DNA of 64,000 bases from the NCBI RefSeq assembly GCF_002113885.1, contig NW_018406002.1, positions 353,958-417,957 of the forward strand, written 5' to 3'. This DNA is from Mizuhopecten yessoensis. Lineage: Eukaryota. The translations under genes were made by a program, and so were the position numbers. Positions 1,091 through 60,870 of this stretch are shown in pieces (the first letter of the stretch is position 1; each line of letters begins with the position of its first letter). The notes beneath the pieces are model-generated. The model was given only the letters and a program-made list of their open reading frames with translations, had not been told where the DNA came from and made no database searches.

Positions 1091-3146
1091 CATCCCATGC
1101 CGTCCATATACCACCTGCCCTAAACCCATCATCCATACCATCCACACTAACTCGTCCCGTCCCATCAAGCGCCGTCCCTACACCACCTGCCCTAAACCCA
1201 TCATCCATACCATCCACACTAACTCGTCCCGCCCCATCAAGCGCCGTCCCTACACCACCTGCACTAGACCCATCCTCTAACTCATCCACACTAACTCGTC
1301 CCGTCCCGTCCCATCCAGCGCGGTCCCTACACCACCTGCCCTAAACACATCCTCCACACCATCCACACAAACTCGTCCCGTCCATCCCATGCCGTCCCTA
1401 CACCGCCTGCCCTAAACCCATCCTCCACACCATCCACACTAACTCGTCCCGTCCCATCCCGAGCCGTCCCTACACCACCTGCCCTAAACCCATCCTCCAC
1501 ACCATTCACACTAACTCGTCCCGTCCCATCTCAATGCTGCCCCTACACCACCTGCCCTAAACCCATCCCCCACACCATCCACACTAACTCGTCCCGTCCC
1601 ATCCCGAGCCGTCCCTACACCACCTGCCCTAAGCCCATCCTCCCCACCATTCACACTAACTCGTCCCGTCCCATCTCAATGCTGCCCCTACTCCACCTGC
1701 CCTAAACCCATCCCCCACACCATCCACACTAACTCGTCCCGTCCCGTCCCATCCCGCCCGGTCCCTACACCACCTGCCCTAAACACATCCTCCACACCAT
1801 CCACACTTACTCGTCCCGTCCCATCCCATGCCGCCCCTACCCCACCTTGCCCCTTAACCCATCCTCTACGCCATTCACCCTTACTCGTCCCGTCCCATCC
1901 CGAGCCGTCCCTACACCACCTGCCCTAACCCCATCCTCCACACCATCCACACTAACTCGTCCCGTCCCATCAAGCGCCGGCCCTACACCACCTGCCCTAA
2001 ACCCATCCTCCCCACCATTCACACTAACTCGTCCCGTCCCATCTCAATGCTGCCCCTACACCCCCTGCCCTAAACCCATCCCCCACCCCATTCACACTAA
2101 CTCGCCCCATCCCATCCCGAGCCGTCCCTACACCACCTGCCCTAAACCCATCATCCACACCATCCACACTAACTCGTCCCGTCCCGTCCCATCCAGCGCG
2201 GTCCCTACACCACCTGCCCTAAACCCATCCTCCACACCATCCACACTTAATCGTCCCGTCCCATCCCATGCCGCCCCTACACCACCTTGCCCCTTAACCC
2301 ATCCTCTACGCCATTCACACTTACTCGTCCCGTCCCATCCCGAGCCGTCCCTACACCACCTGCCCTAAACCCATCCTCCACACCATTCACACTAACTCGT
2401 CCCGTCCCATCTCAATGCTGCCCCTACACCACCTGCCCTAAACCCATCCCCCACACCATTCACACTAACTCGCCCCATCCCATCCCGAGCCGTCCCTACA
2501 CCACCTGCCCTAAACCTTTCCTCCACACCATTCACACTATCTCGCCCCATCCCATCCCGAGCCGCCCCTACACCACCTTGCCGCTTAACCCATCCTCCAC
2601 ACCATTCACACTAACTCGTCTCGTCCCATCCCGTGCCGTCCCTACACCACCTGCCCTAAACCCATCCTCCACACCATTCACACTAACTCGTCCCGTCCCA
2701 TCCAGCGCCGTCCCTACACCACCTGCCCTAAACCTATCCTCCACACCATTCCTACTAACTCGTCCCGTCCCATCCAGCGCCGTCCCTACACCACCGCCCT
2801 AAACCAATCCTCCACACCATTCACACTAACTCGCCCCATCCCATCCAGAGCCGTCCCTACACCACCTGCCCTAAACCTATCCTCCACACCATTCCTACTA
2901 GCTCGTCCCGTCCCATCCAACGCCGTCCCTACACCACCTGCCCTAAACCTATACTCCACACCATTCACACTAAATTGCCCCATCCCATCTCGAGCCGCCC
3001 CTACAGCACCTTGCCCCTTAACCCATCCTCTACACCATTCACACTAACTCGTTCCATCCCACCCCAAACCGTCCCTTCACCACCTTGCCCCTTAACCCAT
3101 CCTCTACACCATCCACACTACCTCGTCCCGTCCCATCCCGAGCCGT
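1091..3146. repeat. C-rich minisatellite, ~72-bp unit, ~28 copies, with a ~440-bp higher-order pattern
   Basis: Unit CCTAAACCCATCCTCCACACCATTCACACTAACTCGTCCCGTCCCATCCCGAGCCGTCCCTACACCACCTGC. The same variant block recurs at 1847 and 2287. Confidence 0.95.
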
Positions 3147-21008: not shown

Positions 21009-22355
21009 CTCAAAGGGATTGACTCTGCTATTGGCCTATATTAAACATCACAAAGGGGTTGACTCTGCTATTGGCCTATATTAAACATCACAAAGGGAGT
21101 GACTCTGCTGTTGGCCTATATCACAAAGGGATTGACTCTGCTGTTGGCTTATATTAAACATCACAAAGGGATTGACTCTGCTATTGGCCTATATTAAACA
21201 GCACAAAGGGATTGACTCTGCTGTTGGCCTATATCACAAAGGGATTGACTCTGCTGTTGGCTTATGTCGCAGAGGGACTGACTCTGCTGTTGGCTTATAT
21301 CACAAAGGGATTGACTCTGCTATTCGCCTATATTAAGCATCACAAAGGGATTGACTCTGCTATTGGCCTATATTAAACATCACAAAGGGATTGACTCTGC
21401 TGTTGGCCTATATCACAAAGGGATAGACTTTGCTATTGGCCTATATTAAACATCACAAAGGGATTGTCTCTCCTGTTCACCTATATCACAAAGGGATTGA
21501 CTCTGCTATTAGCCTATATTAAACATCACAAAGGGATTGACTCTGCTGTTGGCTTATATCACAAAGGGATTGACTCTGCTATTCGCCTATATTAAACATC
21601 ACAAAGGGATTGACTCTGCTATTGGCCTATATTAAACATCACAAAGGGATTGACTCTGCTGTTGACTTATATCACAGAGGGATTGACTCTGCTGTTGGCC
21701 TATACCTCAAGGGGGTTGACTCTGTTGTTGGCTTATATCACAAAGGGATTGACTCTGCTGTTGGCCTGTATCACAAAGGGATAGACTTTGCTATTGGCCT
21801 ATATTAAACATCACAAAGGGATTGATTCTGCTGTTGGCCTATATCACAAAGGGGTTGACTCTGTTGTTGGCTTATATCACAAAGGGATTGTCTCTGTTGT
21901 TGGCTTATATCACAAAGGGATTGACTCTCTTGTTCACCTATATCACAAAGGGATTGACTCTCTTGTTCACCTATATCACAAAGGGATTGACTCTGCTATT
22001 GGCCTATATTAAACATCACAAAGGGATTGACTCTGCTGATGGCCTATATCACAAAGGGATTGACTCTGCTGTTGGCCTATACCACAAAGGGATTGACTCT
22101 GTTGTTGGCTTAAATCACAAAGGGATTGACTCTGCTGTTGGCTTATATCACAAAGGGATTGACTCTGTTGTTGGCTTATATCACAAAGGGATTGACTCTG
22201 CTGTTGGCCTATATTAAACATCACAAAGTAATTGACTCTGCTGTTGGCCTATAACACAAGGAGGTTGACTCTGCTATTGGCCTATATTAAACATCACAAA
22301 GGGATTGACTCTGCTGTTGGCTTATATCACAGAGGGATTGACTCTGCTGTTGGCC
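21009..22355. repeat. 33/40-bp satellite, array 1
   Basis: Unit ATCACAAAGGGATTGACTCTGCTGTTGGCCTAT, with an optional ATTAAAC insertion. Confidence 0.97.
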
Positions 22356-46917: not shown

Positions 46918-47187
46918 TTATGCGATGCTCCTCATGCTGAAAAGGTAGCCCCGCGATGTGCCAGATATATATTGTCTGCCTATTGAAGGGTGTCCCTCGA
47001 GGATATTCAACTTACGGACAAAACACACCAAAGGTTTACACTTCTCATAGAAAAAGCGAAGATCCTCCCCTTTGTGCTCACTCAAAATATGGTTTTCCAG
47101 ACCGCCCATGTATCCCCAGCCATATCCAACATGAACTAACTTGACCCTTTTCCTTTCGTCCTCCTGTGACAGTTGTAAACACAGCAC
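46918..47187 (-). pseudogene. Possible degenerate C2H2 zinc-finger fragment
   Basis: GLENHILSEHKGEDLRFFYEKC has L-x2-H-x4-H followed by F-x-(C>Y)-x2-C spacing. The other zinc ligands are lost. Confidence 0.25.
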
Positions 47188-47680
47188 TCACCGAGTCTTC
47201 CTATCGGACCACTATTTTCCTGTTGCCACTCACTTCACACCCGATAAACGTGTTAACTGGACTCCCACTGTACGGCGTGAATGAATAAAGATGTCTAGAA
47301 GTTAGGGACACCGTTATTTTGGATGTTTATGTCTTCACTACACAATGGCCAGGTTAGAAACACGAATTTTGACTCGTGCGACTCAGTGTCTTCGCCTATA
47401 CACTTCTTACACAGCGTATATACTCAGTTAAGTAGACAGTATTAATTAAACTATTCAAACATATGCCACATTTGTAAAATTATGTTATCCCTTCAGACGT
47501 GGAACAGCCTTTCTCCGCCATGTGTATGTCTAGTATTACATTAAAATGCCAATCTCATGCTTGACGGTTCTAATGTCTACTTACTATCTAGACGATAACG
47601 GTTATGTATTAGTGTACGGTTATGCTCCCTTTGTAATCATATGACCTCAAACTTGTATTGGATACCAACTGTCTAAAACG

Positions 47681-49170
47681 ACAGTAAAACCTGCCCTTGT
47701 CCACACGCGTCTATAACTACAGTCAACCCTACCTTTGTTTCCACCTGCCTATAACTACAATAAAACCTACCCTTGTCCACACGCGTCTCTAACTACAGTC
47801 AAACCTACCTTTGTTTCCCCCTGCCTATAACTACAATAAAACCTATTCTAGTCCACACCTGTCTATAACTACAGTCAAACCTCCCTTTGTTTCCCCCTGC
47901 CTATAACTACAATAAAACCTACCCTTGTCCACACGCGTCTATAACTACCGTCAAACCTACCTTTGTTTCCACCTGCCTATAACTACAATAAAACCTATTC
48001 TAGTCCACACCTGTCTATAACTACAGTCAAACCTACCTTTGTTTCAATCTGCCTATAACTACAATAAAACCTACCCTTGTCCACACGCGTCTCTAACTAC
48101 AGTCAAACCTACCTTTGTTTCCACCTGCCTATAACTACAATAAAACCTGCCCTTGTCCACACGCGTCTATAACTACACTCAAACCTACCTTTGTTTCCAC
48201 CTGCCTATAACTACAATAAAACCTCCCCTTGTCCACACGCGTCTATAACTACAGTCAACCCTACCTTTGTTTCCACCTGCCTATAACTACAATAAAACCT
48301 CCCCTTGTCCACACGCGTCTATAACTACAGCCAAACCTGCCTTTGTTTCCCCCTGCCTATAACTACAATAAAACCTCCCCTTGTCCACACGCGTCTATAA
48401 CTACAGCCAAACCTGCCTTTGTTTCCCCCTGCCTATAACTACAATAAAACCTCCCCTTGTCCACACGCGTCTATAACTACAGCCAAACCTGCCTTTGTTT
48501 CCCCCTGCCTATAACTACAATAAACCCTGCCCTTGTCCACACCTGTCTATAACTACATTCAAACCTACCTTTGTTCCCACCTGCCTATAACTACAATAAA
48601 ACCTACCCTTGTCCACACGCGTCTCTAACTACAGTCAAACCTACCTTTGTTTCCCCCTGCCTATAACTACAATAAAACCTGCCCTTGTCCACACCTGTCT
48701 ATAACTACATTCAACCCTACCTTTGTTTCCACCTGCCTATAACTACAATAAAACCTCCCCTTGTCCACACGCGTCTATAACTACAGTCAACCCTACCTTT
48801 GTTTCCACCTGCCTATAACTACAATAAAACCTATTCTTGTCCACACCTGTCTATAACTACAGTCAAACCTACATTTGTCACCATCTGTCTATAACTACAG
48901 TCAAACCTACATTTGATAACTACAGTCAAACCTACCCTTGTCCACACCTGTCTATAACTACAGCCAATCTTGTATTGGAGACCAACTGTCTATAACTACA
49001 GTCAAACCTACCTTGTGTCGCCACCTGTCTATAACTAGAGCGAAACTTATATTTGAGACCACCAGTATATAACTATAACCAAATTTACCATAGAGACAAA
49101 CTATTTAAAAACTACAAAACCTACCTTTGTGACAGCATATCTATAGCTACAGTCAACCCTACCTTTGCAG
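47681..49170. repeat. 38-bp satellite organised as a 76-bp dimer, degenerating at the right edge
   Basis: Alternating CAGTCAAACCTACCTTTGTTTCCACCTGCCTATAACTA and CAATAAAACCTACCCTTGTCCACACGCGTCTATAACTA. Confidence 0.95.
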
Positions 49171-51450: not shown

Positions 51451-52088
51451 ATGTTAGGCACAGTGAATACATATAGTTAATCATAGTGGAAACTGCAGTC
51501 CAATAGTTGTATACGGATCTAGTTATAATGTTAATCCGTATAATGCCTATCGTGGATGAAAGCTTCATCATCCGATACTTAGGAAGGTGAGCATAATAGT
51601 TCTGAATCAGAAAACAGTTAAATTGCTGTTCACCGTTTTGAGGTAAGACCACGGAAACTGGCGACCTGCTATTGTAAAATACAGCAACCATAAAATTGAG
51701 CAGTATATAAATAGACACTGACCTTGAAATTGAAGACTACTTTGTTATATAACCAGGTAATCGACTTCGTAATATCAAGGTACTTTTGTTAAACATACAA
51801 GACATTACATATGTTAATGTCTGCAACTTAAAATACACGTTAAAGTCTTATTCTCGTGTGTTTTACATGTTAATGTGAAATGATGCAGTTATCATGGATC
51901 CCAAGATGCACACAGTGTAAGTGAGTGTTCCAGATCCTGTTACTCAACTTATTTGCAGCTTGCATAACGGAGAGAAGGTAAATCTCGGCATTCTTGTACT
52001 GTACGATAAACGATCTACATGTAAGCTCAATACACAGTCACCGAGTTCTACTCACGGAACCCCTTCCAAGCATTCAGCCCTTGGTACC

Positions 52089-52142
52089 ATTATATGTCTT
52101 GGTTTGCTTTTAAGTGGCAACGTAGAAATCAACCCTGGTCCT
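52089..52142 (+). other. 2A-like (StopGo) peptide ...IICLGLLLSGNVEINPG|P
   Basis: Matches (G)D(V/I)ExNPGP except for D>N, is preceded by a hydrophobic LLLS helix, and lies directly before the APE domain. Confidence 0.8.
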
Positions 52143-54630
52143 ACAGATATCAACTTTTATTATCAAAACGCCAAAAGTGTGGCAAACAAATTACAAACTA
52201 TGAACTCCAACTTCTGTCCTTCAGACTTTGACATTATAGCTTTGACAGAGACATGGTTACATGATGGTGTTTTTAGCAGTGAATTATTGGATCCGGATCA
52301 TTTTAACATTTTTAGGAACGACGGAAATTCGTCCAATTCCATGAAATCGAAAGGCGGAGGTGTGTTATAAGCTATAAATACAAAGTTTCAGTGTACCCTC
52401 AGAACCGATTTACAAACTGACTGTGAGGTAGTATGAAATATCCACAAATAAAAGTAAACTTTTTGTGGCTTCCTTTTACCTTCCGCCCGACTGTCCACCT
52501 GATTATATTAATGAATTCGAGCGATCAATCGAATTATTAATGGACAGTATTGGTGAGAAAAGTGACATTTTAATAGTAGGAGACCTAAATTTCCCCGGTA
52601 TCCAATGGTTACAGGACCCTACGGAACCCCGTTTGGTGCCCCAATGTGTTAAAGATAACGCCAGGTATACAGCGATACTGAACGCCGTTAGTGAACGTGA
52701 TTTACACCAATATGTACCGAGTCCGACCAGGCGTGACACCATACTCGACTGGGTCCTGGGCTCTCTGGACACGGTAGCACTCTCGGTGTATGACACGATT
52801 TTGGAATCCGACCATCTAGCCATCTCGGGGAGCCTCAACATATCCGATGCGGCGCGTTATAGTAATATGGACCGTACAGCTTTTAACTATAAACGTGCAG
52901 ACTTTATAGCCATGCAATGTATTTTCTCAAACACTGACTGGTCTTTTATTTTAAATTCTGAAACAGTGAATGGTGCGTTTTACCAACTACATGAAGTACT
53001 CACTACAACTATCAAGACATGCGTCCCCATGATTAAATTAAGAAAACGATGTTTACCAACATGGTATGACAATAACCTTATAGCAATGGTTAAAGAGAAA
53101 GAACGTGCGTACAAAGTCTCTGTCAAGGCCGGTAAACGACGTGATTCTCCTGAGTATGCTATTTTTTCTTCTCTACGGCAGGAGTTCAAATCAATCCAAA
53201 CATCGAAATACTATGATTTTATCACCAATGTTGAACATTCTGTAAAAGACAATCCCAAACGTTTTTGCGAATTTGTGAAAGGAAAGCGGAAGGAGGGGAC
53301 TGTCCCGGACTCGGTTTCGGACTGTTCATCGTCGTCTTCCAACAATGTTGAATCTGCAGACATGTTTAACTCTTTCTTCAAAAGTGTGTTCTGTATGGAC
53401 GACGATTGTGATCTTCCTCAAATATATGTAAAAAATAAATTTGACTGCTCGCTAAGCACAATTGATTTGAATTGTACTGCTGTTCAGAAGGCACTTACAC
53501 AAATAAATGTGAAAAAAGCTTGTGTCTACGACAACATATCTGGCGTAGTTTTTAAAGAGTGTGTTGATGAGTTATATGTACCACTGTGAAACATTTTTAA
53601 CCGTTCATTGCACGATGGTATCTTTCCAAGTATTTTTAAAAGGGCTAATGTTATTCCCATTTTTAAATCTGGTAAACGTAATGAAGTCTCAAATTACAGA
53701 CCAGTATCTGTATTACCAATTATATCTAAAGTTTTCGAAAAACTGGTTGACGTACATTTTTTCTAATTTTATAAATCCGCTTATCTGCGATGAGCAACAT
53801 GGTTTTATGCCAAAACGGTCTACTGTTTCAAACCTGGCATGTTTCAACGATCAGATTTCCAAAGCCTTTGATAAAAAAAGTAGAATTACATGCTGTATAT
53901 ACTGATTTTTCAAAGGCATTTGACAAAGTAAACAACAGATTATTATTGCATAAGTTAAAATTGTATGGTGTAGAATGTAGCATTTTAGATTGGCTTGCTA
54001 CTTATTTGAAAGACACATTGAAGCGTGTTACTGTCAATGGGGCAACATCCGGTTGGTGTGATGTAATTTCCGGTGTGCCTCAAGGTTCGATACCTGGACC
54101 TCAACTTTTCCTTATTTTTATCAAAGAACTGCCATCTATTCTTAAATTTTCTGAATCTCTTATGTTTGCCGACGACAGCAATTTTTTTTAAGTGTGTAAG
54201 AACGTTGTCTGAGTGTGAGCAGCTACAGAGCGATATAGATAGAATGTATGATTGGTGCACTGCGTGGAAAATGAAAGTGAATGTAAAGAAGTGCTGCCAG
54301 GTCATTTTTACAAACAAGAAGAAATGTATGAATTTTAATTACACTATGAACGGTGACAACCTGAAGAATGAATGGTGTGTGAAAGATCTTGGTGTTTGGC
54401 TGACCTCTTCAATGAGTTTTAGTACCCACATAAGACGTACAGTTTCCAAAACAATGCGAATGCTAGGTTTTATAAAACGTACATGTACAAGTTTTAAACA
54501 AATACCTGTCTTAAGGTCTCTATATATAAGTCTTGTGAGGAGTCAGTTAGAATACTGTTGTCAGATCTGGTCTCCTTACCAAACATCTTTAATTCACCAG
54601 GTCGAAGTTGTCCAGCGCAAAGTTTTGAAA

Positions 54631-57600
54631 GGGCCGGTTTCCAAAACGGTCCCTTCTCTGATTCAAATTTCCTGTTGGTGGTGCATTGCCCATGCCGTTG
54701 TGGTCACAAATCTATAAAATATAAAGATTTAGGTCACTTGGTTTGTTTTTTATGGCTCCTCAAAATTGTACCTTTCAGAAGCTGTCTAAGTGTTGATAAA
54801 ATGTGCATGTTATGTAAAATATTAATGAAAATCTAATCAAATGATGGTCACCGTAAAGAATACATTCATGGCATGATTGTGACAAAAAATCATGTTTCCA
54901 TCGCGCCATTTGGCTGTTTTATGGAAGAAACAATCTCAAAAATGCCATTTTCGATGATAACATTTTAGACACAAAAACTGTGTTTTTTAGAGAATACACC
55001 CTTTTATGGGCGTTGGATGCAAACCAATTTTTATCCTATTAAACAGTACGTAATATGCTATTGATGAGAGGAAAAATCATCAAAATGTAAGTGGTGGAAC
55101 ATTTTCAAATGTTGGGTTGAATTAGCCTATGGTTGAATTGCCGATTTTCGACTTTCTTTAGATAATTAACAAAAAAACGAGAGTATTTGCTCGGTATGTT
55201 GAGAATATGTACACAGATATGAAAAAAAGTGAGAGAAACACTTTTTCATAAAAAAAATCCAAGATGGCTACTTCACAAGTCCCCGTGGTTGAAGACATTG
55301 GCTGACAAATAGACAGAACAACAAACAAAACGTGTTCCTTATGATTTTGGTTGGTTTTCGCATTTACGGGAGTGTTCATAGCTACGGGCGATTGTATAAT
55401 ACCTATATTTATAAGTTTGGTTAGTCACATGGTAACGGGGATCTTTCATATCGAGCCCCAAACATACTTTCGACATATGCACTCCGTTGCCGCATGGAAA
55501 ACTATTTCAAGTTTTGTCGGAATTTCTTTACCTGTGGTTGTAATGGTCGAGGGTTTTCCAGCGTCCTGTAATACCCAAGGTAGTACAAGATACTGGAGAT
55601 GTGCGCACACATTCCCATCGTTCTCTCTCCAACTGGGCACTGGCAGTAGTAGTCCTTTATTGGGGCCTCAACATCGGGTGAAACGGTGAACCGTATCCAA
55701 ACGTTATATTTCGTTTGGCTTTTGTGTCGAGAATGTATTTGACATCGGAGAAGGTCTGGGGAGTGCTGGTAAAGCCACACCTCATAGTCTCCGTCATCAC
55801 TTAAATGTTCGGCGATGTAACCAGGAGCCAGAGATATCTGATACGTTCCACACGTAATGGTTCTCAAGTAATCAAGATCGAGACGGGGAAACAGTACGGA
55901 AGATGCATCCATCTTGACAAACTCGGACCTTGCCCGTCTAGATAGATCCGGATCTGTCTTGACTCTCTGAGCTAAACCATTCGGTGTTGTCAAACGGTCC
56001 TTCATACGTTCAGCCATTAGCCTATCTTTGGCATCTCTCTCTGGAGATCTCTGGTAGATCGGTCCTCTAATACCATTCAGACAGGCTGTGACGGTTCGAA
56101 GCAAAGCCTCGATGACATTGATAAAGCTGTTAGACACCAATTGCGTTCGGAAGAACGTCCAGTGTTTCAGACGACCATGATAGGATTCCACAATCCACCT
56201 CGATTTGGTGATAGTTCTGTCAAGATTTGCTTGGACGTCAGAATGTTGACTTTGACCGGGTTTCAGGTATGACGGCATGCTAGCATTGAGGCCAGAGGCT
56301 TCGAGAACTGGTAGGACATCTCTAAAACCTCGGTCAACGACAACGTTGTCGTCTGGTTGTAGCCAAGTAACTAGCTTGTCCATGACTTTTTTTGTAATTG
56401 TAGCATCATTTTCGCTGCCAGTGAATGGTCCTACTGTGTCCAGAATGTAGCCATCTGGTAAGGCGATGCTCATGAATTTGAGATAGTTTCTCTTCTTCTG
56501 GCCACAGTAGGACATTCTCTGGAGCTTGTGGTCGGAGCTTTTCTGGATATAAATATAGGTGCCATCTAATATGGCAGTGGCTTTATCTCCAAAAAATGCT
56601 TCTGAAAAGACAGTATTGTGCCCGAGCAACTGTTCTCTTGTCAAGTGATCCGGACCTAGAAATTGTGGGACTATCGATGTGTCTAATGCCTGTACTATGG
56701 AGTGGAAAGTTTTGGACACACTTGACTTGGAAATTCCAAAAAGAGAAGAACACTGACTCCAGGAAATGTCGGTTTTCAGTTTTACCCAGAACAGTAATAG
56801 AGCATCGTGTGCAGTCATGGTATATATACCAAATGAAAGATATGGGGAACAGTGCGGGTGGATTTCGAGGAACTGATCTTTGGACCAACCTGTCCAGGCC
56901 ATGCATGCCGAGTCATCAAGAGAAGAAAAGCTTATTGTAAACGCAGACTGGTTCTGTGAAAGGACGTGCGACACCTCTAGGAGGTCATTAATGATTTCGG
57001 ACGATTTTGATGGTAACTGAGATTCCAAGGAACCTCTACCATCAAGGACAACCTCTGTAGACGGATCTAAGTCGTTACCAATAAGGTGAATGGAGCAGAC
57101 GCGGGATGAGGTGGGACACCACAGTTTGTGTGAATAGATCAGGTGATGTCTTGCACGTTTTGGTAAGACTGATGATTTTGTTCCATTTCTTGCAAAGGTA
57201 ACAAGACAGAGACAGCATTTTTTGTGTGAAGATGATCCATTCAAAAGATCATGAAGGGTCAGCAACGGCAGGATATGGGACGGGGAGTCGTCTTCTTCCT
57301 CTATTTCCTGGTTCTGCTCGGGTTCAGGTTCAGGCTGATTTTTGTTCCGAAGATACTTCATGTAGCACTTCTGGCAAATAAGTGCTTGTTCCTTTGCTGA
57401 CATCAATCCTTGTTGCACCAGCGTATCTAGGAGCCATTTATATTGTGGACTATTTACATTGCGTGCACTTCTGTTCTTATTGCCACTACGTTTCTTGAAG
57501 TATACTTGACACCCTTCTCCAACACATTTACCCTCCATCTTGAAACAATAACGATTGGTTTATGAAGCGTCGATAAAGTAACAAAATAGCAAGCCACCGA

Positions 57601-58703
57601 TGATTGCTGTAAACAGCTAATACTTAGTAGTTTGGTACAATTATGCGAAAATGTGTGATAAATAACGAACAACTAATTACACAAAATAACAAGACAATAT
57701 AATAAATCACATTCAATACCTCCAAGAAGCGCAGAATTGATTGATTACTTAGAACAAAATAAAGTATTTCATATGGATAATCTATCTATTCGATGTGGCG
57801 TGGTCGGCAGGCACAAAGAAAGTGAGACAAGTCAGGGTCCCAACCCTGACAGAGCCACAACGCTTTGGAGATGGGACAATAAAACAAGGAAAGTGAGACA
57901 AGAATAGCTAGCGTCGAGTCAATGATTCCGTAAACGTATAGACAAAGACAAGAAGATACGGATAAATGTACAAGGCCACACGATCAGAAAATTCAGAAGA
58001 GGACAACTTGAGATAGAACAGTATTCATGTATCAGGGTGTCCTCAGTGTAAATCTTTATATCGATACTGTTTATTTAGTCGTTACACATCATAAAACTGT
58101 CATGAAAATATCCGCTCTGATATTCAATATAAAAGTTTGTATATAATAAGCTATATAATAGGGTTTCAGACAAGGTTGTTACTCATTTCCCCTTTTCTTT
58201 CAATTTACAACCACATTCAGGCGGCGATATGAGAACGTTCCACCACATGGAATTAGCTGATTTTTGGTACACATATGAAACAAGTAAAGCTCTATCCGAT
58301 TTTCTGATGGAAATTTGCATCCAAAACTATATAACGGGAGAAAATTGCAATTTTATGGCATTTTTCTTCATAATTGTGTCTCTGCAAGTGCATTTTCATC
58401 CGAGAAATTTTTTTTTTTATGTTTTATGAATAAACACGATGTTTTGGAAATATTTATCAAAAGAAATTTATACTATGTTGCGAATTACAATTTCGAGATA
58501 ACCTTCTTTTATTTACGAACTTATGTCTTTGATGCTGAAATTGACAACTTTATAAAAATACATTTTCACTGAAATTATGAAATCTGGGTGTCGGAAAGGT
58601 GTAAAATTATTCTTCGGAAAAGAAAAAAACAGTAGTTGAGCTAGATAAGAAATTATACGAGGGCAGGCTCCTATGGAGAATTAACATTACTGGAAACAGG
58701 CCC
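54631..58703 (-). mobile_element. Autonomous-looking PIF/Harbinger-ISL2EU-Spy (PHIS) group DNA transposon, 4073 bp, no TSD, target AAA|TTT
   Basis: TIRs GGGCCGGTTTCCA (54631-54643) and TGGAAACAGGCCC (58691-58703), 12/13 matching. Flanks are ...ttgAAA and TTTtta.... Removing the element restores the LINE frame. Confidence 0.93.
55502..57538 (-). CDS. 678-aa DDE transposase (DDE_Tnp_4/IS5-ISL2-like) with two N-terminal Cys/His zinc-binding modules, an HTH and a C-terminal SWIM finger
   Basis: Uninterrupted ORF. Catalytic motifs ILDGTY, VVDRGF and RWIVES. HTH region TGWSKDQF...LFWVKLKT...LFGISKSSVSKTF. N-terminal CxxxxC...CQKC and CCLC...RVCSIH. C-terminal YCQCPVGERTMGMCAH (CxCxnCxH). Confidence 0.93.
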   Translation of the reverse strand: MEGKCVGEGCQVYFKKRSGNKNRSARNVNSPQYKWLLDTLVQQGLMSAKEQALICQKCYMKYLRNKNQPEPEPEQNQEIEEEDDSPSHILPLLTLHDLLNGSSSHKKCCLCLVTFARNGTKSSVLPKRARHHLIYSHKLWCPTSSRVCSIHLIGNDLDPSTEVVLDGRGSLESQLPSKSSEIINDLLEVSHVLSQNQSAFTISFSSLDDSACMAWTGWSKDQFLEIHPHCSPYLSFGIYTMTAHDALLLFWVKLKTDISWSQCSSLFGISKSSVSKTFHSIVQALDTSIVPQFLGPDHLTREQLLGHNTVFSEAFFGDKATAILDGTYIYIQKSSDHKLQRMSYCGQKKRNYLKFMSIALPDGYILDTVGPFTGSENDATITKKVMDKLVTWLQPDDNVVVDRGFRDVLPVLEASGLNASMPSYLKPGQSQHSDVQANLDRTITKSRWIVESYHGRLKHWTFFRTQLVSNSFINVIEALLRTVTACLNGIRGPIYQRSPERDAKDRLMAERMKDRLTTPNGLAQRVKTDPDLSRRARSEFVKMDASSVLFPRLDLDYLRTITCGTYQISLAPGYIAEHLSDDGDYEVWLYQHSPDLLRCQIHSRHKSQTKYNVWIRFTVSPDVEAPIKDYYCQCPVGERTMGMCAHISSILYYLGYYRTLENPRPLQPQVKKFRQNLK

Positions 58704-60870
58704 TTTTTATGTTTTAAGGCACACGTTGACTACAATTCCATGTCTTACGCTGACACTTGTAGGCATTTTAATCTTCCTAGCCTCGAACATAGGCGGGCAT
58801 TTTTAGACTGTGTATTTCTTTACAAATGTGTTAATAGTGCTTTTGATTTTCCATATTTAGTCAAGCAAATGTGTTTTAGTCCCTGGTCGTAATCTACGAT
58901 CAATTCGTTTTAACCAGTTTTACTGCCAGAGAAGTTGAATAAACGTTAGAAAGTATACTATTTCAAACAGGATTCAAAGTAATTTTAACTATCTTGTTTT
59001 TGCACCAGACTGTGATATGTTTTGTTTTTATCTCGCCGTGTTCAAAGTACGGTTAAAGAATATTTGCTATTCCTAATTCCTTTTGTTTTACATATGAGTA
59101 TCTTTTAGTGTGTGTTACATGCATAACTGACTGTGATATTTAATACTTGTGTTGTAATGTTTTTTTTTCCATTCTGTTAGTGGACCCTTGGGTCTGTTGA
59201 ATTGGAAATAAATAAATAAATAAAAATAAATAAATCATCAGAGTTCAGTTTGAACAACAGTAGTATACATGTAATGAATGAATGATTCAGTCCTTACATG
59301 ACGTAATGCTAGGTATAATAAGGAGGTAAGTTGTAATTGTATTCTGAAAACCCTGTGTATTACATTGATTTACAGTCAGTAGATGGTAATGAATCTTTGA
59401 GGATATGATGATCTATATGCTATGTTAAGCATGCCTATGTGTCATCACTTTGTCCTAATTAAAATATCTCTCACTTTGGTTCTATCTTTGCTACATCGAC
59501 GTCTCTTTTGTGGTTCATCGCCTATATAAAATGACGTTTCTCCTAATTACAAGACTGTAGTATTGGAGAACTATTGATGTCCTCACGAGAATGAGTTCTG
59601 CGGATTCAACAGATATCTTTGTGGTTTTTGTGGTTACCAGAATCGTTTAGATATACTGACTCCGCAATACAATAGGAACAGTAATCAAGAAATGGCAAAT
59701 ATCGATTTGTTTTCTACTTAACTTCGTTGTCGTTGTAATCAGAAAATTGATTTTCCTTTTCTCTTGAACTTCCTGTTCTTGTACATCATCAGTATCTGTA
59801 TCTCTAATCTTTTGTTTTTAATATGTCGATTCGCCGTCTTTCTGTTGCATTGTTGAAATAGATAAAAACGTAACATCGACCGACTCAGGATTGCTATTTA
59901 ACGGTTCGCGTCCATTCACATTCAAATAATTAAGGGTACATATGATTTGTGTCATCCTTACATTATTTCTTAGTTGATTAATTTATAACGTGAGTTTTAT
60001 CCTGTAAATGCATGTATATGTGTGTACCTTTCAATCGTATCAACAACAGATGTGTATTTTTCAAATGTGTCATCAATTTTCGTGTACCTTTTTTTATTTT
60101 TCAACAATTCCAGTGTTTCTATGTTTGTAACACCAACTGATATTGTAAATCACTTAATTAAGCGATTGTTCTTCACATAATACATTTACGATGTCTCGAA
60201 AGCACAAAAGGACCGCGACACCCATTTGCTCCTTTCTCAGAAATGTATATAGTAACTTGTCTTCTTGTACAAGACGTATTACACACAGTGAGATAACATA
60301 TAATCCTAATGCATGTTGTTATCATTAAAACCCTTAATGTTAAACTCAGTTCTGATGTGTCACATGTGGCTTTAGGAGAGAGATTTCCAAGCAGTTGAAA
60401 AGAAATGTGTTGTTACACAAAAAATATCTGTTTTTAATTACTGTGACGTCACAACTAAGGCCACTCAAATATAGAGTATTCTCTATTTTCATAAGTCACC
60501 GTGTATAATAAAACCGTACTGATAAACACACATCTGATACGTATTTATCTATGTTATGTAAATAGGGAACGAACATTTATACACGAATACGCCTATTGAA
60601 GCACATTGACAGAAATGAAAATGGCAAAATATGCTTTCTCTGTTACCCTAGCGTAATGCAGATAGAACTTGGAAACATACATTATGACATTACCTCAGAT
60701 TTCGATGGGAGAAGTCATGTGCAAAAAGAACTCTGAATATTAAAAAAATTGCAACTGCTAAAGGATATTGCTTTCAATCATCCAATTATCGAAATATCTA
60801 AATTTTAATTATTGAAATTACCACCCCTACGGTGTCAGAGAAATCTAAATTCTCGGAGTGGGGTTCTTGA

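What the first reader, a model, noticed from the sequence alone, without database searches (positions are those of the whole stretch)
54631..58703. Intact DDE+SWIM transposon inserted at AAA|TTT with no target-site duplication, proven by the host LINE reading frame
Seen: removing 54631-58703 joins ...CAG CGC AAA GTT TTG AAA | TTT TTA TGT TTT AAG..., giving VQRKVLK-FLCFKAHVDYNSMSYADTCRHFNLPSLEHRRAFLDCVFLYK. This is a continuous CR1 C-terminal region, with no base duplicated or lost. The element has 13-bp GGGCC-start TIRs and one intact 678-aa ORF. Established: TSD-less insertion into AAATTT defines Spy transposons, while related Harbinger and ISL2EU elements make 3-bp and 2-bp TSDs and usually carry a second ORF (Myb/SANT or YqaJ). 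Inference: this transposase looks ISL2EU/DDE_Tnp_4-like (DGTY..Q, DRGF, RW.VE), has two N-terminal zinc modules and a fused C-terminal SWIM finger, and has no second ORF. It may be a separate lineage that uses blunt, sequence-specific, potentially scarless insertion. The intact ORF inside a decayed LINE suggests recent activity, which makes it a candidate footprint-free tool.
Basis: partly seen in the sequence, partly recalled or inferred. Interest (0 to 1): 0.85.

Follow-up and report, generated by a model that had tools for sequence, protein, structure and literature searches.

The report
Young Spy transposon in scallop

Summary
A 4,073-bp element with 13-bp TIRs and one 678-aa ORF sits at AAA|TTT in a decayed LINE. 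Other copies of that LINE run straight across the site with no base gained or lost. Other copies of the element also have AAA on one side and TTT or TTA on the other, never an AT or 3-bp duplication.

The 'separate lineage' idea is not supported: it behaves as an ordinary Spy transposon. It has one ORF of typical Spy length, the Spy-type catalytic residues and none of the six ISL2EU ones. Its first seven TIR bases equal those of the published cgSpy. It groups (100/100) with ant, moth, oyster and rotifer transposases, far from ISL2EU. The SWIM finger is family-wide (121 of 126 full-length relatives), including an ant element with textbook Spy ends. I could not align a published Spy protein directly.

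Modest additions: conserved zinc modules that the Spy papers missed; a SWIM-like segment in the ISL2EU partner protein; and 98-99% identical copies in Pecten maximus and Ylistrum balloti, suggesting horizontal transfer. Scarless excision is untested, and Spy is already a gene-transfer tool. The scan noted this family before on other pieces of this genome.

The parts
54631..58703 (-). Whole Spy-type DNA transposon, 4,073 bp
   Evidence: joint skipping exactly 4,073 bp in other LINE copies; full-length copies L002 and L016 align end to end
54631..54643 (+). TIR at the 3' end of the transposase gene (13 bp, one mismatch to its partner)
58691..58703 (-). TIR at the 5' end of the transposase gene (13 bp; first seven bases equal to the cgSpy TIR start)
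54628..54630 (+). AAA, left half of the host target AAATTT
58704..58706 (+). TTT, right half of the host target
55072..55110 (+). Subterminal imperfect inverted repeat (39 bp, 77%), partner at 58227-58265; possible extra transposase-binding site (inference)
   Evidence: relative L001 also has subterminal inverted repeats
58227..58265 (-). Subterminal imperfect inverted repeat, partner of 55072-55110
55502..57538 (-). Transposase ORF, 678 aa, no introns
   Evidence: AlphaFold model mean pLDDT 90
57365..57526 (-). N-terminal four-cysteine module (C5, C10, C55, C58), conserved in 87-97% of 90 relatives
57086..57226 (-). Second zinc module, C2CH pattern (C108, C111, C148, H151), THAP-like by motif; only a weak profile match to ISL2EU THAP domains
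56675..56818 (-). HTH_Tnp_4 helix-turn-helix (aa 241-288)
56081..56569 (-). DDE catalytic domain; D325, D402, E451 invariant across relatives, spacing D(76)D(48)E
55562..55753 (-). C-terminal SWIM zinc finger (C632, C634, C644, H646) with its preceding beta strands
51921..54630 (+). Host LINE, 5' part (endonuclease and reverse transcriptase, broken by several frameshifts); CR1-like clade not tested formally
58704..59235 (+). Host LINE, 3' part: end of ORF and (AAAT)n tail

Best explanation
An autonomous, recently mobile Spy transposon (PHIS superfamily) of a family not listed in the Spy survey I read. Shown: it inserts between AAA and TT(T/A) with no base added or lost; it has many near-identical copies; it encodes one protein with C4 and C2CH zinc modules, HTH, DDE and SWIM. 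Inferred: the single transposase binds the TIRs and subterminal repeats through the zinc modules and HTH and cuts both ends flush. The DDE site then joins the two 3' ends to directly opposed bonds at the centre of the palindromic target (zero stagger), so only nicks need sealing and no duplication arises. The role of SWIM (target recognition or dimer contact) is a guess.
For: Empty LINE copies join exactly. AAA|TT(T/A) flanks in L002, L015, L016, L018, L021 and in relatives L001, L004, L006. Single ORF of 678 aa; many published intact Spy ORFs are 650-716 aa. cgSpy TIR also starts GGGCCTG. Shared-residue pattern matches Spy at 11 of 15 and ISL2EU at 0 of 6, by my mapping. Tree: inside a 100/100 clade with ant, moth, bivalve and rotifer proteins. 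Ant element L006 has AAA|TTT, the GGANNNNG end, D(80)D(48)E and the same SWIM. Family-wide SWIM 121/126, ISL2EU-type set 0/120.
Against: No published Spy protein sequence could be aligned directly; the reference set is defined by criteria and host species. D-D spacing is 76, against 79-80 in the definition (a 3-residue deletion of this family; closest relatives have 79). The end is GGG, not the 2014 GGA consensus. Han 2014 says most Spy transposases lack zinc fingers. The AU tests did not reject the window protein, or its subclade, as the earliest branch of the group (p 0.087 and 0.37).
Confidence: 0.91

Rival explanations
1. A separate PHIS lineage, sister to Spy, that shares blunt AAA|TTT insertion but deserves its own name.
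For: It sits in a subclade of marine and rotifer sequences only 30-36% identical to oyster and ant proteins. The root inside the group is unresolved. The Spy papers mention no SWIM or zinc modules.
Against: Architecture, target, ORF number, termini and diagnostic residues are the same as in the rest of the clade. Oyster and ant members differ from each other by similar amounts. Rotifers are part of the original Spy definition.
Confidence: 0.07
2. An ISL2EU element that lost its YqaJ partner gene, with a 2-bp AT duplication hidden or lost at this site.
For: Same Pfam domains as ISL2EU (HTH_Tnp_4, DDE_Tnp_4); 26% identity to a THAP-DDE protein that has a YqaJ neighbour.
Against: ISL2EU flanks read AAT and ATT; none of the junctions here do. 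Zero of six ISL2EU residues. About 3.2 changes per column separate the two clades. The empty site is exact.
Confidence: 0.01
3. The clean junction is an assembly artefact or a coincidence.
For: Short-read contigs collapse repeats, so the two flanks of one contig can come from different copies.
Against: The same junction rule holds in chromosome-scale or long contigs from other species (L001, L004, L006, L018, L021), and the LINE frame and empty copies agree.
Confidence: 0.01

Closest known systems
Spy transposons (Han et al. 2014, PMC4122938; Diaby et al. 2024, PMC11304231), e.g. cgSpy and cvSpy
   Same: AAA|TTT target without TSD, one ORF of about 680 aa, N-terminal HTH, DDE core with Spy-type residues, short TIRs, GGGCCTG terminus as in cgSpy, invertebrate host.
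   Different: Family not in the 2024 table (its scallop entries are 4,768 and 7,586 bp with no TIRs detected). D-D spacing 76. Belongs to a subclade whose nearest members come from unnamed marine assemblies. Zinc modules and SWIM are not described in those papers, though present across the clade.
ISL2EU (IS4EU) transposons
   Same: Sister group; HTH plus DDE_Tnp_4 core; GG termini; an N-terminal C2CH zinc motif; a SWIM-like segment occurs in the partner ORF of the one locus examined (L007).
   Different: ISL2EU has two ORFs (THAP-HTH-DDE and a YqaJ protein) and an AT duplication in A|AT|T. Its transposases carry no SWIM (0/120) and have different diagnostic residues.
PIF/Harbinger, Pangu, NuwaI, NuwaII (other PHIS groups)
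   Same: DDE_Tnp_4-type catalytic domain, short TIRs.
   Different: They make 3-bp TSDs and usually have a second ORF (PMC4482050). Not included in my tree.

Membership tests
Spy | Insertion at AAA|TTT with no duplication or deletion, shown by empty sites | tested here: met
   Exact joint 54630 to 58704 in two runs; flanks of other copies
Spy | Single long ORF, no Myb/SANT or YqaJ partner | tested here: met
   Six-frame scan; no second long gene called in loci L002, L015, L016, L001, L006. Small spliced ORFs not excluded.
Spy | D(79-80)D(44-62)E triad | tested here: inconclusive
   D(76)D(48)E here; nearest relatives 79 and 48, wider clade mostly 76-84. A family-specific 3-residue deletion.
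Spy | Fifteen Spy-specific conserved residues in the DDE domain | tested here: met
   11 of 15 present (Y328, S334, G370, P371, A379, R406, D407, Q431, N438, T444, W448). Positions were mapped by me from the order of letters in the paper, as the figure is not held.
Spy | HTH N-terminal to the DDE domain | tested here: met
   HTH_Tnp_4 E 1.5e-7
Spy | Terminal consensus GGANNNNG | tested here: not met
   Ends are GGGCC(T/G)GT. The consensus is only 'relatively well conserved', and published cgSpy (GGGCCTGG), cvSpy and hsSpy also depart from it, so I do not treat it as defining.
Spy | Monophyly with named Spy transposases, sister to ISL2EU | tested here: inconclusive
   100/100 clade with proteins from Spy host genera and with L006, which meets the Spy criteria. 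No named Spy sequence was available; position inside the clade unresolved.
Spy | Transposition activity in cells | not testable with these tools
   Only indirect: copies 99.6-99.8% identical at different sites
ISL2EU | AT target-site duplication (A|AT|T) | tested here: not met
   No junction reads AAT or ATT
ISL2EU | Second ORF with YqaJ exonuclease | tested here: not met
   contrast L007
ISL2EU | Six ISL2EU-specific residues (Y, L, S, I, H, R) | tested here: not met
   96-100% conserved in the THAP-DDE set, 0 of 6 in this protein
PIF/Harbinger | TWA duplication and Myb/SANT second ORF | tested here: not met

The most novel reading that the evidence does not exclude
Spy transposases arose by fusing an ISL2EU-type DDE transposase to the SWIM module of its partner protein while losing the YqaJ exonuclease, and this change is tied to zero-stagger, duplication-free integration and perhaps exact excision. 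This family is a live example now spreading sideways between scallop species.
Probability: 0.2. Interest if true: 0.5.

Novelty: new member of a known kind. Interest (0 to 1): 0.22.

Why it matters
As a class it adds little: TSD-free insertion at AAATTT is the defining trait of Spy, and an active Spy has already been tested in human cells. Three smaller points have value. First, Spy transposases carry three conserved Cys/His modules, against the 2014 statement that most have no zinc finger; these are the obvious parts to mutate when asking how a DDE enzyme integrates with zero stagger. Second, the family is young, with intact ORFs and very short TIRs, so it is one more candidate for activity tests. 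Third, near-identity across distant scallops points to recent horizontal transfer.

Tried and rejected
Hidden 2-3 bp TSD or TIRs that include AAA/TTT: rejected, because the empty LINE keeps AAATTT intact. Second ORF: none found. Direct tie to published Spy proteins through the primer-encoded termini of cgSpy, cvSpy and hsSpy: no match among about 650 fetched proteins; many bivalve relatives do end in the same acidic EE stop as cvSpy (59 of 81). Matching oyster locus L003 (685 aa, the same length as the published Crgi-Spy) to the published element ends: no convincing TIR pair, so not used as proof. L005 and L008-L010 gave no clear ends. The TSD of ISL2EU-type locus L007 was not resolved. Foldseek against PDB gave only weak hits to integrases, piggyBac, Mos1 and Tn5, none under E 0.001. 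The 2014 supplement is not held. Host species could not be confirmed from run accessions. The L007 partner gene is spliced; I scored it exon by exon and left the joined step out. No N stretch lies in the region studied and none was filled.

Full report
Observation. The element spans 54631-58703. Its ends form a 13-bp inverted repeat with one mismatch, flanked by AAA and TTT. Removing it restores one reading frame of the host LINE, 250 codons without a stop across the join. The LINE has an endonuclease domain, several frameshifts and an (AAAT)n tail. I did not test its CR1 clade formally. Inside the element there is one long ORF, 55502-57538 on the minus strand, 678 aa, and no other stop-free stretch over 152 codons. 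Pfam gives HTH_Tnp_4, DDE_Tnp_4 and a weak SWIM. A 39-bp imperfect inverted repeat lies about 440 bp inside each end.

The lack of a duplication is shown independently. Contigs from runs X1 and X12 join 54630 to 58704 with nothing between. The X1 contig is about 97% identical to the window, so it is another copy of the LINE rather than an empty allele. One X12 contig has AAACTT, which reads as a substitution in a paralogue. Other copies of the element have AAA|TTA (L002), AAA|TTT (L016, L018), TTT on the one end held (L015) and AAA on the one end held (L021). Loose ends add a further site ending in TTA. More distant relatives L001 (57% aa), L004 and the ant element L006 all sit at AAA|TTT. Collapsed short-read contigs may pair flanks from different copies, but L001, L004, L006 and L018 come from long contigs.

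Recent activity. Contigs from four runs cover the element with few differences and at several times the depth of the flanks, though the tool warns that this is no copy number. Copies L002, L019 and L020 are 99.6-99.8% identical to the window, and several encode the full 678 aa. The window copy has four private amino-acid changes (P228, F236, M241, A243) packed into 46 bp; the catalytic residues are intact. Activity itself is not shown. Presence in RNA libraries is not proof of transcription.

What the protein is. Relatives come from bivalves, bdelloid rotifers, ants, moths and unnamed marine assemblies; 371 cluster representatives score under 1e-30. This is the host range reported for Spy. The C-terminal SWIM motif is present in 121 of 126 full-length relatives and in none of 120 proteins from a search seeded with a THAP-DDE transposase. 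That seed has a YqaJ neighbour and so is ISL2EU-type. Han et al. list six residues unique to ISL2EU and fifteen unique to Spy. In my alignment six residues Y, L, S, I, H, R are 96-100% conserved in the ISL2EU-type set and absent from this protein. Eleven of the fifteen Spy letters are present in order; that mapping is mine, since the figure is not held. The triad is D325, D402, E451. The 76-residue first spacing is three short of the definition and of the nearest relatives. Trees place the protein inside one clade (100/100) with ant, moth, bivalve and rotifer sequences, about 3.2 changes per column from the ISL2EU clade. Sixteen sequences with incomplete cores were dropped first, and no Harbinger or IS5 outgroup was included. 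The AU tests did not reject an early-branching position within that clade, so a subfamily is possible.

Link to published Spy. The cgSpy TIR primer reads AAA then GGGCCTGG, the same first seven bases as this element. Many published intact Spy ORFs are 650-716 aa with AAA/TTT flanks. The ant element L006 meets the 2014 criteria (AAA|TTT, GGANNNNG end, single ORF, D(80)D(48)E) and carries the same SWIM; its size, 2,890 bp and 686 aa, equals the Lasius niger entry in the 2024 table, which is suggestive only. I could not align a named Spy protein. The scallop entries in that table are different elements.

Mechanism. Shown: target choice and exact insertion. From the literature: cgSpy transposes in human cells, prefers an AAWTT-type site and makes no TSD; blunt joining was proposed in 2014 and awaits biochemistry. 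Inferred: one transposase binds TIR and subterminal repeats, cuts flush, and attacks directly opposed bonds in the palindrome. The model is confident (pLDDT 90) and puts the three acidic residues on an RNase H-like core, with only weak structural matches to known transposases. Exact excision would follow only if blunt donor ends are rejoined cleanly; the cgSpy paper never uses the words excision or footprint.

What is added. Han et al. state that most Spy transposases have no zinc finger. Here C5/C10/C55/C58, C108/C111/C148/H151 and C632/C634/C644/H646 are 87-100% conserved over 90 sequences. A profile of the C-terminus matches one exon of the ISL2EU partner gene in L007 (E 7e-4 within that locus), and the next exon continues the motif. 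This hints that the module is on the partner protein in ISL2EU and fused to the transposase in Spy. It rests on one locus, and SWIM domains are common, so it is a lead. I found no paper describing this, within the limits of the library.

Cross-species copies. A P. maximus gill sample (NSIT01) holds a 99.1% identical copy, and the P. maximus chromosome assembly holds 97.8% copies with the same 5' flank. Ylistrum balloti holds a 2,678-bp internally deleted copy, 98.3% identical including non-coding DNA. Ylistrum branches below the Pecten-Amusium group, whose split was dated at about 130 million years. Such identity is hard to explain by descent. Other agents' notes call the host the Yesso scallop; I did not confirm that. 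No host-gene yardstick was run and contamination is not excluded, so horizontal transfer is likely, not shown. It is a common event for DNA transposons (my knowledge).

Verdict. A real, well-resolved element and a clean example, but a new family of a known kind. The scan had already noted the same family on other pieces of this genome.

Noticed in passing
L016:38-4110, L021:4628-8544, L018:4603-7280: Copies 97.8-99.1% identical to the window element in Pecten maximus and 98.3% in Ylistrum balloti, non-coding DNA included; probable recent horizontal transfer between scallops.
   Followed up: partly
window 56812-56857: All four ORF differences between this copy and the consensus of four runs fall within 46 bp and all change an amino acid; local mutation cluster, conversion tract or assembly error.
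   Followed up: partly
L007:10548-11099: The partner gene (SAP, YqaJ) of an ISL2EU-type element has a SWIM-like segment over two exons that resembles the Spy C-terminus.
   Followed up: partly
window 52089-52142: 2A-like motif (GNVEINPGP) just before the LINE endonuclease; such motifs are known in non-LTR elements of marine invertebrates (my knowledge).
   Followed up: partly
L021:1-28875: The P. maximus locus holds the element three times with the same flank or break, about 20 kb apart for two of them: a segmental duplication. Its sequence is annotated as the first exon of an ankyrin-repeat gene model.
   Followed up: no
L015 (NSIT01000223.1): A scallop transposon next to a Gypsy-like fragment was deposited within a bacterial metagenome assembly; a relative is labelled Candidatus Thiodiazotropha. 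Both look like host DNA in bacterial records.
   Followed up: partly
proteins P0146 and P0148: A second Spy-type family is 87% identical between Y. balloti and M. yessoensis.
   Followed up: no
   Followed up: no
window 1847-2802, 21822-22217 and about 47000-49000: Tandem-repeat arrays or strongly skewed stretches.
   Followed up: no
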